Position numbers and translations under genes: made by a program. A DNA stretch of 63,891 nucleotides, filler included, from Octopus bimaculoides (lineage: Eukaryota), in the NCBI RefSeq assembly GCF_001194135.2. It is 5 parts of 5 records of this genome, joined end to end, with 100 filler letters (N's around TTAATTAATTAA, not from the genome) between each part and the next. Parts side by side here need not be neighbours in the genome. Positions count along the whole stretch, not along the records: positions 1 to 23,943 come from NC_069004.1; 4 more parts are not named here. One strand, given 5' to 3'. The notes beneath the pieces were generated by a model that made no database searches, was not told the origin of the DNA, and worked only from the letters and a program-made list of their open reading frames with translations. Within the stretch, counting starts at the first letter, position 1, and every line of letters begins with the position of its first letter. Positions 10,900 to 23,550 of the stretch are shown here, piece after piece.

Positions 10900-11230
10900 T
10901 GTATGCTGTAGTGTATATATTTTTTTATACGCTTTCTTTGTTTTGTTTTATGCGTATGCCCATATTTAGAGGTCTTTCAGTAATGGAAGAGAATATAACA
11001 TTCTATAGAAATACATGTAGATATTACTTTTAGCAATTTACAATGTGCATTTGTTTTCGTTTTTCTTTGTATTTTGACGAGCTTGTTTTATTTTTATTGC
11101 TTTTTTATATTGTTGGGGCTTTTTGTTTTGTTTTTTTGTTTTTTGTTTGATATTCTTTTTTTTTTATAGTCTCAGAAAGTGTCATGTTGGCTTGAGACCA
11201 AACATGGTTGCTGAAAACGGGACAGCTATA
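10900..11230. repeat. Probable diverged fifth copy of the local tandem unit (blocks B and C only)
   Basis: AATGGAAGAGAATATAACATTCTATAGAAATACAT (10982-11016) aligns by eye to block B; weaker block C match near 11170-11205. Confidence 0.45.
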
Positions 11231-11937
11231 TGGAAAGAAAGAAAGAAAGAAAGAACGAAAGAAAGGATAAAGGAAGGAAGGAAGGAAGGAAAAAAGGGAG
11301 AAATAAAAAAGATAATGGGGATAATGATGATGATGATTATTGGAGTGATGGTGAAGGTAGCGACAGTGGAGGCGGTGATGGTGGTGGTAGTGGTGGTGGT
11401 GATAATGATGACGATGGCGATCATCATCATCATCATCACCATCATTTAACTGGTACTTTATTTTATCGACCACAAATTGAGAAAAGACAAAGTTTCAGTT
11501 ACAGGGCGGGATTTGAACTCAAATCAGCTTGTAGAACCGGAACAAATACTGCAGGATATTCTGTATGATGCACAAACGATTCTGTTTAAGTTATTCTGAT
11601 GTAAACATATAAATTAGAAGACTAAAATTATCAGACTTTTGTGACAGCAAACAGTTGATCAAAGATTATCTGGATATGGCCATCTCGTCATTTTCTTGTA
11701 TTTAGTACCACAGTAGCCTTCTTTCTAAAATTGTCGGATGAGATTTGCAGATATTTTTAATAGATCATCGAGCAGCTTCGTGGAGGTGTTGCTTCATTGA
11801 CTCATGAGACAATATATTAATATATTTTGCATAAATAGGGCTGTGCAATAATGGTTTCAGATTCAAGTACAAGTAATTTTGAGTGGAGGAGCTAATTTTA
11901 TACCACCAGCCTAAGTACTTCAGAAATACTTTATCTT

Positions 11938-12381
11938 CTTCTCTTCTTCTTCTTAATCATTTTTGCCCCTTGTGGAGCATAGGGCCTCAACAGTTATTTT
12001 CCACTTTTTGCGGTCATTGGCGTGTTTCTTGGCTGCTTCCCATGTCAGGCCGGTAGTCCTGAGCTCGTCCAAAATGCTCCACTTCCATGTCTGCTTCGGG
12101 CGTCCTCGCTTCCTTTTCTCTTGCAGATTCCAGTTAAGTGCTTGTCGTGTCACATTTGAGGGTTCTTTCCGCAGTGTGTGTCCGATCCATCTCCATTTCC
12201 TTCGTCTAATCTGAACATGTATGGGCTCCTGGTTGGCCCTTTCCCACAGGTCGGTGTTTGGCACTCTGGCGAACCACTTCAGATGGAGGATCTGCCGGAG
12301 ACATTTGTTGATGAAGGTCTGGATCTTCTTGTAGTTGCTGCAGGTGGCTTACCATGTTTCAGAGCCATACAAAAGCACAGA
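11938..12381 (-). mobile_element. 5'-truncated RTE-clade LINE (C-terminus and tail)
   Basis: Minus frames LLYGSETW, IQTFINKCLRQILHLKW and RRKWRWIGHTLRK...KRKRGRPKQTW...RKKWK..VEALC are typical of RTE ORF ends; (GAA)-type tail; candidate 8-bp TSD TTTATCTT at 11930-11937 and 12382-12389. Confidence 0.9.
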
Positions 12382-12892
12382 TTTATCTTAGCCATCCCAA
12401 AATGATTAATCGAACCCAAAACGTGGAGCTATAAAGAGATGTTGAATAACAAAATCGATAGTGCATCACACAACTAAATAGCTTGGCAGAATTTAGCAGT
12501 GTCTTCGTATGTTCTGATATCAAATCCTGACGATGCCAAACTTTGTATTTTATTCTTTGGAGGACGATAAGCTATAGTATCAGCCGTGCACAAGGGTAAA
12601 CCTAAAGAACTGTTCCATACCACAAAATATTCAGCTATGCATCAATGTTAGTGATCATATATCAGGTTGATTATCATTGGTGCATGTATGTGGTAGCTCG
12701 ATCTGAAAAAAGCAGCAACAAAGTTACTCTGAAATTATATCGTACCCTTTTAAAAAAATTAAGGGTAAATTGGGAAGATATTTTTTCTCTACACACTCAA
12801 AGAAGTGAATCATCGAGGTTGGAGTGCTTTTGATCATAACTGGTTGATCAGGTTTGAGCTTCAGCCAAACAACGCCAGAATATTAGGTCGGT

Positions 12893-13150
12893 TAAGGCGG
12901 CAGGCTGGCAGAAACGTTAGCACGGCGGGCGAAATGCTTAGTGGTATTTCGTCTGCCGCTACGTGCCTTGCCTGGCGTGCTAATGATTTTTTTCTACTCT
13001 AGGCACAAGGCCCGAAGTTTTGGGGAAGGGGCCAGTCGATTAGATCGACCCCCAGCGCGCAACTTGTACTTAATTTATCGACCCCGAAAGGATGAAAGGC
13101 GAAATCGACCTCGGCGGAATTTGAACTCAAAACGTAAAGACAGACGGAGT
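12893..13150. mobile_element. SINE family B pieces: a plus-strand head abutting a minus-strand body
   Basis: AAGGCGGCAGGCTGGCAGAAACGTTAGCAC head, then AGGCACAAGGCCCGAAG...GGAATTTGAACTCAAAACGTAAAGACAG. Confidence 0.7.
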
Positions 13151-13770
13151 ACCACCTTGAAATTAGTCCATAATATCATCTCCCAACACAATTCTTCGCA
13201 CATGGTAAGATGTATGTTGCATTATCAAGAGCGTCAGGAAAAGAAAATATAAAAATATTAAACGAGATAAATGAAAAGGGTCCATTTACTGACAGTTGTG
13301 ACTGCCAAAAAATTCTACAGTGATGTGAGACATTCATAACTCTCTTTTAATTGAAATATATTTAAGTCTTCTTTTAATTACTAGGAAAGGGACACTAGAA
13401 ACACTTAAGACATCTATAAGTGAATATAATGAAACAATAATTTAGCAAAACTCAACTCTTCATATTGGTAAATGTAATTCCTTAATTCCCAGCAGAGCAT
13501 CTATTTTCTAATTCACTCAAGTGAAGATTCATGAACATTTTCCCTTGACAGTCTCATCTCTTTTCCAATTTTTATTATCATCTTTTTCAAATGTATCATG
13601 GATTATTTTACTGATTACAGAATAAACTATAACAGAGTCTTTGTTCAATTCATGAGCATATTGTTAATTTAGTTTATAATTTATGTATCATATCTATATG
13701 TGTATATAATATTAATATACGCAACACATATGCCAGCAGAAAACCGACCGGAGGGCGGTTTTTCTGCTAG
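13151..13770 (+). mobile_element. Helitron 3' end: RepHel helicase C-terminus, 3' hairpin and CTAG terminus
   Basis: TLKLV / HLPTQFFAHGKMYVALSRASGKENIKIL...KILQ* (stop 13321-13323) matches the Pif1-type motif VI region; terminal hairpin AGCAGAAAACCG/CGGTTTTTCTGCT (13735-13768) ending CTAG (13767-13770) followed by T. Confidence 0.85.
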
Positions 13771-13779
13771 TGTACTTAA

Positions 13780-14012
13780 TAATCGGTTCAAATTTTGGCA
13801 CAAGGCCAGCAAGTTTTAAAGGGAGAAGGAAGTCGATAACATCGATCCCCAAGATAGGACACAAATAGTACTTATTTTATCAACCCGCTCTCCCACCCAT
13901 CGAAAGGGAATAAAAAAACAAAGTCGACCTCAGCGGAGTTTGAACACATAACGTAAAGAGTTGGAATAAATGCCAGTAACCATTTTGTTCGGTGTACTAA
14001 TGAATCCGCCAA
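13780..14012 (-). mobile_element. SINE family B, degenerate
   Basis: GGTTCAAATTTTGGCACAAGGCCAGC...AAAGTCGACCTCAGCGGAGTTTGAAC. Confidence 0.7.
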
Positions 14013-14109
14013 CTCACAGCCTCCCACTGTATATTTAATAACATAATTTATATAAACGATAACAAAACACCTCAGTTATTACTTGAAGCAAAAATACTAC
14101 GAAGTATTA

Positions 14110-21560: not shown

Positions 21561-21561
21561 G

Positions 21562-22052
21562 GAAGAAGAAGAAGAAGAAGAAGAAGAAGAAGAAGAAGAA
21601 GAAGAAGAAGAAGAAGAAGAAGAAGAAGAAGAAGAAGNNNNNNNNNNNNNNNNNNNNNNNNNNNNNNNNNNNNNNNNNNNNNNNNNNNNNNNNNNNNNNN
21701 NNNNNNNNNNNNNNNNNNNNNNNNNNNNNNNNNNNNNNNNNNNNNNNNNNNNNNNNNNNNNNNNNNNNNNNNNNNNNNNNNNNNNNNNNNNNNNNNNNNN
21801 NNNNNNNNNNNNNNNNNNNNNNNNNNNNNNNNNNNNNNNNNNNNNNNNNNNNNNNNNNNNNNNNNNNNNNNNNNNNNNNNNNNNNNNNNNNNNNNNNNNN
21901 NNNNNNNNNNNNNNNNNNNNNNNNNNNNNNNNNNNNNNNNNNNNNNNNNNNNNNNNNNNNNNNNNNNNNNNNNNNNNNNNNNNNNNGAAGAAGAAGAAGA
22001 AGAAGAAGAAGAAGAAGAAGAAGAAGAAGAAGAAGAAGAAGAAGAAGAAGAA

Positions 22053-22082
<30 letters not shown>
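21562..22082. repeat. (GAA)n/(GAC)n microsatellite spanning an N gap
   Basis: Directly visible. Confidence 0.95.
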
Positions 22083-22093
<11 letters not shown>

Positions 22094-22239
22094 AGAAGAA
22101 GCGAATATTCTTCCCATGTCCGAGTGAATATAATTTTATGCGCATATATAACAGATGTTCGTTTGTCTCACATTTTCTTCAAGTAAGATTTCACATAAGA
22201 ATAGTTATCAGAGCTGAGTTGGTATGTTCTTCGGTTTTA

Positions 22240-23017
22240 TTCCTGTCGACCTCCACGGAATTTGAACTCAGAACTTAAACACGGACGACATGTCGCTAAG
22301 CATTATGTCCGGCGCAGTAACGATTTTGCCAGCTCGCCGACTTAAGTATATGCAGCATTGGTTTCGAATTTTGGCACAAGTTCAGAAATTTCAACTGGTG
22401 CGCATTTTATCAATTACCACAGGACGAAAGGCAAAGTCGAACTCGGTGGAACTTGAGATCAGAACGTAAGAACGGAGAAAATGCCGCTAAACACTTTGTC
22501 CGACGCAGTAACGATTCTACTAGCTCACGGCCCTACTTGAAACGAGGATTTCATGACTTATATTTGTCAGATAAACTCGTCCGTGTTTTTCTGCTAGGGA
22601 CTCCATCGTTGTATGTCTTAGAGAAGGTAAAATTTATCCAAATTTCAAAAACGACAAATAAAAGTTGTAGAGAAAGAATGAAGCTACAAATATAAAACAT
22701 TACGATAGAAACTTTTCTTGGTAATTCAAATAATATTGGAAAATATTAAAACAGAAGAAAGTAGAGAAAAAAACGAACGAATTTATTTGACGACCTAATA
22801 AATATCGGTTCCAAATTTTGGCAGAAGGCCAGCAATTTCTGGGGAAAAAGGTAAGTCGATTATATCGACCCCAATCTTCAAGTTATATTTAATCTACCCC
22901 CGAAAGCACTAAAGGAAAATTCTACCTAAGCGGAATTCGAACTCAGGACATAAAGCCGGGTGTAGTACTGTTAAGTACTTTAGTAGGTGCGTTAACGATT
23001 CTGCCAGCACGCCGCTT
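22240..23017 (-). mobile_element. Three degenerate SINE family B copies
   Basis: GGAA(T/C)T(T/C)GA..TCAG...AACGATT(C/T)T.C.AGC body repeated at about 22245, 22435 and 22925. Confidence 0.65.
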
Positions 23018-23037
23018 TTGGAAGCTATAACATATAT

Positions 23038-23550
23038 TTGACCTCCATATGTTTAAACTCATTATATTCTTTTTTTTTCCCCGGTATTTCAATATTTCTT
23101 TCGACCAAACAGAAACTAAAACTAGAACGACACATCGTGGATTATTTTTTATTTCATTTTTTTTTTATAACTCGTATTTTTTGCTAATTTTTTTAAACAA
23201 TATTTTTGCCTTCCAGTTATTGATAATTCTGTAAATGGAAATGTAGAGCATATTTTATGAAATTATATTTTCTTTTTCTTAACAGACATTCCAATCTATT
23301 TTTATGCTTTATTAGATTGACAGAATGAATTGGAGTTTTTAATATATTTTCATAGATATCTTTGTTTCCTTTATGTTTTTATTTTGCTTTTCTTTTTTGT
23401 CTGGTTTTTTTTTTTTTCGTCTTCCTGTCAATGAAGCTGATTCTACTTTCGCCAACCGAACGTAAAGTGCAGTTTAAGTTGGTTTGACACGAATGAGGAA
23501 GCCCTAATCAACCAAACACAGAGCAGACATCACACGCAGAACAATTACTA
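23038..23550. repeat. Local tandem unit, copy 4
   Basis: Blocks at 23038 (Z), 23112 (A), 23217 (B), 23431 (C) and 23512 (D). Confidence 0.8.

What the first reader, a model, noticed from the sequence alone, without database searches (positions are those of the whole stretch)
10900..23550. Unexplained local tandem family: conserved blocks separated by T-rich spacers
Seen: four clear copies (14110, 17519, 20981, 23038) and one probable copy (about 10900), all in the same orientation. Each has 20-60 bp conserved blocks in fixed order, while the T-rich spacers between them vary freely and the copies are otherwise separated by unrelated SINEs and microsatellites. The unit does not recur in the remaining 40 kb. 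Inference: block-wise conservation suggests constraint, such as tandem alternative exons, a clustered ncRNA or small-peptide family, or a repeated cis-regulatory module. An old local duplication decaying neutrally is the null.
Basis: partly seen in the sequence, partly recalled or inferred. Interest (0 to 1): 0.7.

Follow-up and report, generated by a model that had tools for sequence, protein, structure and literature searches.

The report
Duplicated DNA carrying dead U6 relic
A stretch of non-coding octopus DNA about 0.8 kb long, carrying a broken half-copy of the U6 splicing RNA, was duplicated four or five times in a row long ago and has mostly decayed at random since, so its "conserved blocks" are probably ordinary leftovers and not a new functional element.

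Summary
Four same-strand copies of a ~0.8 kb core lie at 14076-14870, 17482-18192, 20951-21606 and 23011-23559. Each has four alignable blocks in fixed order, separated by T-rich tracts. A fifth copy at ~10976-11165 is only marginal. New result: block 2 is a relic of U6 spliceosomal snRNA (nt ~8-53; nt 24-43 kept at 73/80). Its ACAGAGA box is mutated differently in every copy, its 3' half is absent, and it carries changes shared by all copies, so it was already dead before the duplications.

The blocks are not coding, have no conserved RNA fold and match no Rfam family at threshold. They are only 64-82% identical between copies. Divergence is homogeneous among blocks, and they are barely better conserved than complex non-block flanks (74% vs 64%). 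The contrast with the spacers comes from the T-rich tracts being scrambled, as expected from slippage.

Best reading (confidence ~0.62): an old local tandem duplication of non-coding DNA containing a 3'-truncated U6 pseudogene, decaying roughly neutrally, with SINEs, a LINE fragment and microsatellites inserted between copies.

Not excluded: weak constraint on U6 nt 24-43 (scan-corrected p≈0.01), or origin from a real U6 gene array. Genome-wide dispersal, expression and cross-species conservation could not be tested. Low interest.

The parts
14076..14870 (+). Core copy A. A-B homology extends from at least ~14040 to ~14900.
   Evidence: Whole-core profile hit E=2e-139; alignment A1.
17482..18192 (+). 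Core copy B. A-B homology extends from ~17447 to ~18222.
   Evidence: Profile hit E=3e-136; BLAST 14061-14646 vs 17467-18033 at 68% identity.
20951..21606 (+). Core copy C. Its tail runs into (GAA)n and the gap at 21638. Its 5' edge is cut by a SINE.
   Evidence: Profile hit E=4e-141.
23011..23559 (+). Core copy D, the shortest copy, lacking the (ATT)n tract. Its 5' edge is cut by a SINE.
   Evidence: Profile hits E=4e-68 and E=6e-52.
10976..11165 (+). Marginal fifth copy E, with only the block 3 region weakly alignable. Blocks 1-2 would lie in the gap 10266-10889.
   Evidence: Soft local alignment z~3-4.5; missed by the block profiles; gap-free spacing of 3364 bp to copy A.
14186..14231 (+). 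U6 snRNA relic (U6 nt 8-53) in copy A. Block 2 spans 14190-14242.
   Evidence: nt 25-53 match 25/29; Rfam U6 19.9 bits (gathering score 44).
17598..17643 (+). U6 snRNA relic in copy B. Block 2 spans 17601-17655.
   Evidence: nt 24-46 match 20/23.
21058..21103 (+). U6 snRNA relic in copy C. Block 2 spans 21061-21113.
   Evidence: nt 24-43 match 20/20; Rfam U6 16.8 bits.
23099..23144 (+). U6 snRNA relic in copy D. Block 2 spans 23103-23155.
   Evidence: nt 18-43 match 21/26.
14107..14144 (+). Block 1 of copy A (TTGACCTCCAT followed by an AT-rich, TATA-like stretch), about -72 to -35 from the inferred U6 +1. Equivalents: B 17515-17542, C 20966-21005, D 23024-23061.
   Evidence: The promoter-relic reading is an untested lead.
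14340..14423 (+). Block 3 of copy A, the longest block, of unknown origin. Equivalents: B 17744-17827, C 21197-21277, D 23214-23300.
   Evidence: No similarity to the U6 3' half, no conserved fold, stop codons in all frames.
14716..14778 (+). Block 4 of copy A, of unknown origin. Equivalents: B 18039-18102, C 21513-21572, D 23431-23497.
   Evidence: No conserved fold, stop codons in all frames.
13782..14027 (+). SINE inserted upstream of core A. Independent insertions of the same family lie upstream of C (20750-20968, - strand) and D (22804-23013, + strand).
   Evidence: different distances from block 1, and opposite orientation in C.

Best explanation
A non-coding segment of octopus DNA about 0.8 kb long was duplicated locally, head to tail, four or five times. 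It already contained a dead, 3'-truncated copy of U6 spliceosomal snRNA (about nt 1-53) embedded in T-rich DNA. The copies have since diverged by roughly 0.16 changes per site per lineage. The compositionally complex stretches are still alignable and form the 'blocks'. The T-rich tracts between them have been scrambled by replication slippage and microsatellite growth. SINEs, a LINE fragment and microsatellites have filled the space between copies to give the present ~3.4 kb spacing. The U6 relic most likely began as a 'tailless' 3'-truncated retropseudogene made by LINE machinery. No current function is needed to explain the pattern. Shown here: the four copies, the U6 identity of block 2, its inactivation before duplication, the lack of coding or structural signal, and homogeneous divergence among blocks. 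Inferred: slippage as the cause of the spacer scrambling, the retropseudogene origin, and neutrality.
For: Four co-oriented copies and no other copy in the window. Block 2 matches U6: 0 of 300 shuffles reach the observed score in any copy, and copy C is 20/20. The block 2 profile scores 21.2 bits against U6 nt 9-52, versus a maximum of 1.1 in 500 shuffles. Rfam gives independent U6 hits at the homologous position in copies A and C. In an ungapped register, identity to U6 is 50% at nt 8-23, 91% at nt 24-43 and 55% at nt 44-53, then drops to chance (15% vs 19%) from nt 54. Changes shared by all copies (nt 16, 23, 47) date the inactivation to before the duplications, and the ACAGAGA box differs in every copy. 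Stop codons occur in all frames, there is no conserved fold and no tRNA. Pairwise identity inside blocks is only 64-82%. Divergence among blocks is homogeneous (p=0.36) and invariant columns are not clustered. Precedent: 3'-truncated copies are the commonest snRNA pseudogene class in mammals, with truncation in purine-rich single-stranded segments that pair with T-rich target DNA (PMC4476161). Here the relic ends just after GAGAAGATTA and is followed by DNA that is 65-70% T in all four copies. No terminal inverted repeats or other transposon termini were found. The upstream SINEs are independent insertions. The organism is an octopus.
Against: A uniform-rate neutral simulation does not reproduce the contrast. 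It gives blocks 0.17 and spacers 0.17, against the observed 0.158 and 0.265, and only 216 of ~560 spacer columns are shared by all four copies. So either the spacers evolve faster or the blocks evolve slower, and the data cannot separate these. For the A-B pair, blocks are slightly better conserved than complex flanks (74% vs 64%, p=0.04). Beyond the core, A and B share only faint colinear patches. U6 nt 24-43 is better preserved than a scan-corrected decay model predicts (p=0.007-0.010), although the relic was only recognisable because of that stretch. None of the four cores contains a SINE, while the DNA between them is full of SINEs. The retropseudogene model comes from mammalian L1, target-site duplications are no longer detectable, and the family could not be searched for in the rest of the octopus genome.
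Confidence: 0.62

Rival explanations
1. The units are a decayed array of real U6 snRNA genes. They descend by DNA-level duplication from a genuine polymerase III U6 gene, with block 1 as the remnant of its upstream promoter (PSE plus TATA) and blocks 3-4 as conserved 3' flank. The genes then died and eroded.
For: The block 1 core TTGACCTCCAT lies 44-71 nt upstream of the inferred U6 +1 in all four copies and is followed by AT-rich, TATA-like sequence, which is the distance expected for a snRNA proximal element. snRNA genes are often tandemly arrayed (general knowledge). In copies B and D a T-run begins at +54, with no earlier run of four or more T.
Against: U6 nt 54-107 is absent in all copies, so identity falls to chance at a sharp boundary. 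That fits a truncated retrocopy better than erosion of a full gene. TATA-like strings are everywhere in DNA this AT-rich. Block 1 is the least conserved block (per-lineage divergence 0.21). No cephalopod or mollusc PSE is available for comparison. Copies A and C have T6-T7 runs within the first 12 nt.
Confidence: 0.17
2. The blocks are functionally constrained. The family would be a lineage-specific set of non-coding exons, small RNAs or cis-regulatory modules, possibly exploiting the U6 nt 24-43 sequence, either in sense as a mimic or in antisense as a 20-nt complement of U6.
For: The block/spacer contrast exceeds the uniform neutral simulation. U6 nt 24-43 is over-preserved at p~0.01, while the catalytic box next to it varies freely. 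Blocks are slightly better conserved than complex flanks (p=0.04). No SINE has landed inside any core. Within block 3, a pyrimidine tract followed by AG is present in all four copies at the same alignment column.
Against: Blocks are only 64-82% identical, divergence is homogeneous among them and invariant columns are not clustered. There is no conserved structure or covariation, no coding signal and no Rfam family. The p-values are post hoc or affected by ascertainment. Hypermutable T-rich tracts explain the contrast without selection.
Confidence: 0.12
3. The core is an ordinary dispersed non-autonomous transposable element that captured a U6 fragment, and the four copies are separate insertions.
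For: The DNA between cores shares no homology beyond SINEs. The region is saturated with mobile elements.
Against: All copies are co-oriented and regularly spaced, whereas the window's true SINEs occur in both orientations at irregular spacing. There is no copy in the other ~10 kb of the piece. No terminal inverted repeats, poly-A tail or defined termini were found. Core edges are set by later SINE insertions.
Confidence: 0.07

Closest known systems
3'-truncated ('tailless') snRNA retropseudogenes: Group II of Doucet et al. 2015 (PMC4476161); Classes II and III of Denison & Weiner 1982
   Same: The U6 homology ends abruptly inside the RNA, at about nt 53. That point lies just after the purine-rich single-stranded ACAGAGAAGAUUAG segment, and T-rich DNA follows directly. 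The catalytic elements are not maintained.
   Different: Target-site duplications and an exact 5' end at nt 1 can no longer be seen. The model was established for mammalian L1, not for octopus LINEs. Here the relic was then amplified by DNA-level tandem duplication, not by repeated retroposition.
Local tandem segmental duplication (macrosatellite-like array) decaying neutrally
   Same: There are at least four head-to-tail copies in one orientation at a period of a few kilobases. They show substantial divergence, and each copy has its own transposon insertions.
   Different: Only ~0.8 kb of each ~3.4 kb period is still homologous. The rest has been replaced by, or buried under, SINEs, a LINE fragment and microsatellites.
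Tandemly arrayed U6 snRNA genes with a type 3 polymerase III promoter (PSE, TATA, +1, T-run)
   Same: There is a U6-derived sequence, a shared upstream motif at a PSE-like distance, AT-rich sequence near a TATA-like position, and T-runs downstream.
   Different: The 5' stem-loop, ACAGAGA box, AGC triad, internal stem-loop and whole 3' half are lost. Rfam scores are less than half the gathering threshold. These are not functional U6 genes.

Membership tests
Functional U6 spliceosomal snRNA gene (Rfam RF00026) | Covariance-model score at or above the gathering threshold (44 bits) | tested here: not met
   19.9 bits for copy A and 16.8 bits for copy C. Only model positions 1-51 and 1-41 are matched.
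Functional U6 spliceosomal snRNA gene (Rfam RF00026) | Intact ACAGAGA box (nt 41-47) | tested here: not met
   ACATACT, TCAAAGT, ACACAAT and ACATCGT in copies A-D.
Functional U6 spliceosomal snRNA gene (Rfam RF00026) | Presence of the 3' half (AGC triad, internal stem-loop, telestem strand; nt 54-107) | tested here: not met
   Identity 15% at nt 54-70 against 19% expected by chance. No profile match of block 2 or block 3 to the U6 3' half.
U6-derived sequence (homology only) | Significant sequence similarity to U6 in all copies, at the homologous position | tested here: met
   0 of 300 shuffles reach the observed score in each copy. Profile score 21.2 bits vs a null maximum of 1.1. nt 24-43 match 73/80.
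3'-truncated snRNA retropseudogene | Homology ends internally, in a purine-rich single-stranded segment of the snRNA | tested here: met
   Homology ends at about nt 53, after GAGAAGATTA. The criterion comes from PMC4476161. The boundary is uncertain by a few nt because of decay.
3'-truncated snRNA retropseudogene | Flanking target-site duplications, and a 5' end exactly at snRNA nt 1 | tested here: inconclusive
   nt 1-7 are at chance level (29%). Both flanks are T-rich low-complexity DNA, so any duplication is unrecognisable.
3'-truncated snRNA retropseudogene | T-rich target DNA at the 3' junction | tested here: met
   The 40 nt after the relic are 65-70% T in all four copies, and T-runs start at +54 to +56 in A, B and D.
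Type 3 polymerase III snRNA gene unit | PSE at about -55 and a TATA box at about -30 | tested here: inconclusive
   The shared motif TTGACCTCCAT lies at -44 to -71 and is followed by AT-rich sequence. No cephalopod PSE reference could be found, and the AT-rich background makes TATA-like strings uninformative.
Local tandem duplication array | Three or more head-to-tail copies in one orientation at a regular period | tested here: met
   Four copies on the + strand. Spacings are 3364 bp (gap-free, if E is counted), ~3404, ~3453 and ~2017 bp, the last three across gaps of estimated length.
Local tandem duplication array | Homology across the whole repeat period | tested here: not met
   Only the ~0.8 kb core aligns. 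The tails share only dispersed SINEs and two faint patches.
Dispersed transposable element | Copies in both orientations at unrelated sites, and many genomic copies | not testable with these tools
   Within the window there are no minus-strand copies and no extra copies. No cephalopod genome is available. Pattern scans of the metagenome and viral collections were empty. The fetched loci are not octopus DNA.
Dispersed transposable element | Defined termini (terminal inverted repeats, poly-A or a microsatellite tail) | tested here: not met
   Only low-complexity A-rich/T-rich complementarity was found.
Structured ncRNA or miRNA cluster | Conserved secondary structure with compensatory changes, or an Rfam match | tested here: not met
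   Consensus folds of -1.5 and -0.1 kcal/mol with one compensatory pair each. The mir-297/466-type hits lie in microsatellites outside the blocks.
Tandem alternative coding exons or small-peptide genes | An open frame kept in all copies | tested here: not met
   Stop codons in every frame on both strands in at least one copy for blocks 2-4. Only one frame of the ~35-nt block 1 is open in all four copies. No ORF with a protein-like product was found.

The most novel reading that the evidence does not exclude
The cores could be a lineage-specific family of short non-coding transcription units seeded by a U6 fragment. One version is ~55-60-nt polymerase III transcripts running from about 23 nt upstream of ACTAAAAT to the T-run at +54, as the geometry of copies B and D allows. 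Another is an antisense RNA carrying a 20-nt perfect complement of U6 nt 24-43. In either case selection would keep that 20-mer while the catalytic box drifts.
Probability: 0.08. Interest if true: 0.6.

Novelty: new member of a known kind. Interest (0 to 1): 0.17.

Why it matters
It matters little biologically. It is a useful worked example of how local duplication combined with slippage-prone T-rich tracts produces "block-wise conservation" that looks like constraint. Because U6 is essentially invariant across animals in this stretch, the relic supplies a known ancestral sequence. That allowed dating of the inactivation relative to the duplications, and a position-by-position decay test that does not depend on the alignment. 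If the modest over-preservation of U6 nt 24-43 turned out to be real, it would point to a U6-mimicking or U6-complementary element, but present evidence does not require that.

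Tried and rejected
1. Block 3 as the 3' half of U6, implying a U6 gene split by an intron-like T-rich insert. It looked plausible by eye but was rejected: there is no profile or pairwise signal above shuffles.
2. Coding exons or small peptides. Rejected because of stop codons in all frames and no protein-like ORFs.
3. A structured RNA or miRNA hairpin in block 3 or block 4. Rejected.
4. The Rfam mir-297, mir-466 and mir-598 hits. 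These are microsatellite artefacts outside the blocks.
5. tRNA genes. None found.
6. SINE 'X' as evidence that the whole 3.4 kb unit was duplicated. The three X copies are all 75% identical to one another, so this is uninformative.
7. The pre-core sequence shared by A and B resuming beyond the SINEs upstream of C and D. It does not.
8. Exact-ORF look-ups, tried to obtain an independent assembly of the locus. Nothing is on record.
9. Pattern scans for the block 3 skeleton in metagenome and viral contigs. No hits.
10. Sampling octopus DNA through relatives of the LINE ORF. The contigs obtained lack all the window's SINE families, so they are not octopus DNA.
11. Literature on cephalopod or mollusc U6 arrays and PSEs. 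Nothing usable.
12. Terminal inverted repeats at the core ends. None.
13. My first Fisher test on the U6 core versus its flanks (p=3e-9). It counted shared ancestral changes four times, so I replaced it with a two-stage, scan-corrected simulation (p~0.01).

Full report
**Observation**

The piece (1-23943) is AT-rich and crowded with microsatellites. It contains eight assembly gaps. A dust-masked self-BLAST, a four-way MAFFT alignment and nhmmer profiles of each block confirm four copies of a ~0.8 kb core, all on the + strand:
- A at 14076-14870
- B at 17482-18192
- C at 20951-21606
- D at 23011-23559

Each copy has four alignable blocks in the same order. No further copy exists on either strand of the piece.

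The block profiles miss it. Soft local alignment gives only z~3-4.5, starting at 10976 in block 3. Its gap-free distance to block 3 of copy A, 3364 bp, does match the period of the other copies, and its blocks 1-2 would lie inside the gap 10266-10889.

**Gaps**

All gaps abut microsatellites.
- 21638-21986 has (GAA)n on both sides, so it is probably one unspanned array.
- 15625-16430 has (TA)n on the left and unique DNA on the right.
- 19330-20286 has a CAT-rich tract on the left and (GT)n on the right.

Continuity across the last two cannot be shown. The A->B, B->C and C->D spacings therefore rest on estimated gap lengths. No gap interrupts blocks 1-4 of any copy. Nothing here is coding, so reading frame across the gaps is not an issue.

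**What block 2 is**

A lenient Rfam scan gave one meaningful sub-threshold hit: U6 spliceosomal RNA at 14176-14231 in copy A. A separate scan of copy C gave the same family at the homologous position. The reference used was the human U6 sequence, written from my own knowledge; this stretch is identical in fly and human.

- In local alignment to U6, every copy beat all 300 shuffles, and copy C matches nt 24-43 at 20/20.
- The block 2 profile scores 21.2 bits against U6 nt 9-52, versus a maximum of 1.1 in 500 shuffles.
- In an ungapped register anchored at nt 24, identity to U6 is 29% at nt 1-7, 50% at nt 8-23 (25% expected by chance), 91% at nt 24-43 and 55% at nt 44-53. It is 15% at nt 54-70, against 19% by chance.

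So the relic covers about nt 8-53 and the 3' half is absent. I had thought by eye that block 3 might be the U6 3' half, which would imply a split gene. That idea failed every test.

The ACAGAGA box differs in each copy. Several changes (nt 16, 23, 47) are shared by all four copies. The U6 copy was therefore already dead before the duplications.

**What the other blocks are not**

- Every frame on both strands has stop codons in one or more copies, except one frame of the ~35-nt block 1.
- The only protein-like ORFs in the window are retrotransposon tails and microsatellite translations.
- Consensus folding of blocks 3 and 4 gives -1.5 and -0.1 kcal/mol, with one compensatory pair each.
- No tRNA was found, and no Rfam family reaches its threshold.
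- No terminal inverted repeats or other mobile-element termini were found.

**Is the block conservation more than neutral decay?**

Twenty-column windows in the blocks reach 0.75-0.88 mean pairwise identity. The T-rich spacers sit at 0.45-0.63, near what their composition alone gives. Over whole blocks, however, the copies are only 64-82% identical pairwise. Per-lineage divergence from the family consensus is 0.14-0.21 in blocks and 0.24-0.30 in spacers, the latter close to saturation.

- Divergence is homogeneous among the four blocks (chi-square p=0.36).
- Invariant columns are not clustered within blocks (permutation p=0.25 and 0.59).
- For the A-B pair, blocks are 74% identical and complex non-block flanks 64% (p=0.04, with blocks chosen post hoc).

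A uniform-rate simulation gives no contrast (0.17 in both) and keeps nearly all spacer columns. In the real alignment only 216 of ~560 spacer columns are shared by all four copies. So the spacers turn over faster than the blocks. That is expected for slippage-prone T-rich tracts in a locus this rich in microsatellites. It is an inference, though, and slower blocks cannot be formally excluded.

One residual signal remains. U6 nt 24-43 is better preserved than a two-stage decay model predicts after correcting for the window scan (p=0.007-0.010). This is inflated by ascertainment, because the relic was only recognisable through that stretch.

**Architecture between copies**

Outside the core, the units share only dispersed SINEs.
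- Element "X" (15240-15385 +, 16527-16671 -, 18418-18551 +, and a partial copy at 20390-20440 -) is a tRNA-derived SINE. Its three full copies are all 75% identical to one another, so it does not show a larger duplicated unit.
- A and B share two faint colinear patches beyond the core (z=3.0 and 4.7).
- Three of the four cores have a SINE of one family immediately upstream. The distances from block 1 differ, and in C the orientation is opposite, so these are independent insertions.

**Organism**

The ORF at 11953-12264 (-) is 85% identical to Octopus bimaculoides "endonuclease-reverse transcriptase" fragments. This confirms a cephalopod source and identifies a LINE fragment.

**Origin of the relic**

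Doucet et al. 2015 (PMC4476161) report the following for mammals:
- 3'-truncated copies are the commonest class of snRNA pseudogene (65% of copies).
- They are made by LINE machinery.
- The truncations fall in purine-rich single-stranded segments that pair with T-rich target DNA.

Here the relic ends just after the purine-rich GAGAAGATTA. It is followed by DNA that is 65-70% T in all copies, and T-runs begin at +54 to +56 in A, B and D. This fits a tailless retropseudogene that was later carried along by DNA-level tandem duplication.

The alternative is a decayed array of real U6 genes. It is suggested by the block 1 motif TTGACCTCCAT lying at -44 to -71 from the inferred +1, followed by AT-rich sequence. 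No cephalopod or mollusc promoter reference could be found to test this. The sharp loss of homology at nt 53 argues against it.

**Limits**

No cephalopod genome or transcriptome is reachable with these tools.
- Exact-ORF look-ups found nothing.
- Pattern scans of the metagenome and viral collections were empty.
- Contigs fetched through relatives of the LINE ORF lack all the window's SINE families, so they are not octopus DNA.

**Verdict**

The constraint interpretation is not supported. The best explanation (confidence ~0.62) is an old local tandem duplication of non-coding DNA carrying a dead, 3'-truncated U6 relic, decaying roughly neutrally. This is an ordinary kind of feature. The U6 identification is the only new element, so interest is low.

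Noticed in passing
window 11953-12264 (-), and 5222-5366 (+): The first is the C-terminal tail of an RTE-type LINE reverse transcriptase, 85% identical to O. bimaculoides 'endonuclease-reverse transcriptase' fragments, with Pfam PF20049 present in relatives. The second is another RT-tail-like ORF fragment that starts right after the gap at 5221.
   Followed up: partly
window 1-307, 2116-2454 and 23651-23943: Three copies of a tRNA-derived SINE in reverse orientation; its tRNA-like head is visible as a reverse complement near 250-307 and 2400-2454. Bases 1-206 and 23740-23943 are 94% identical, far younger than the other repeats. The piece therefore begins and ends inside copies of the same element.
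   Followed up: partly
window 13782-14027 (+), 20750-20968 (-), 22804-23013 (+): Three independent insertions of one SINE family lie within ~10-90 bp upstream of block 1 in three of the four cores, while none of the cores contains a SINE. This may be chance in SINE-dense DNA, an insertion preference for the A/T-rich pre-core, or a hint of a polymerase III-type target.
   Followed up: partly
window 15240-15385 (+), 16527-16671 (-), 18418-18551 (+), 20390-20440 (-): A second tRNA-derived SINE family ('X', with a GGTTAAGAA...GGTTCAATTCC head). In both units A and B it occurs as a + copy and a - copy on either side of an assembly gap. The inverted pairs may have contributed to the assembly breaks.
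   Followed up: partly
window 17310-17399, 10183-10265, 11386-11447: Sub-threshold Rfam hits to mir-297, mir-466, mir-598 and similar families fall on (TA)n/(TG)n/(CA)n and (GGT)n/(CAT)n microsatellites, often on both strands. They are low-complexity artefacts, not miRNA genes.
   Followed up: yes
all eight gaps (3018, 4866, 7282, 8619, 10266, 15625, 19330, 21638): Most assembly gaps start or end in a microsatellite or homopolymer: (ATT)n, (CT)n, poly-T, (TA)n, (GT)n, (GAA)n. The assembly broke at low-complexity arrays, so the stated gap lengths are unreliable.
   Followed up: yes
window 14461-14606 and 17864-17922: Copies A and B both carry an (ATT)n array at the same place between blocks 3 and 4 (about 45 and 20 units). 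Copies C and D lack it. This suggests A and B are sister copies, or that the site is a shared slippage hotspot.
   Followed up: no
window 14202-14221, 17614-17633, 21074-21093, 23115-23134: U6 nt 24-43 is preserved at 73/80 across the copies, while the adjacent ACAGAGA box is different in every copy. Scan-corrected p is about 0.01, but this is subject to ascertainment bias. It remains unexplained.
   Followed up: partly
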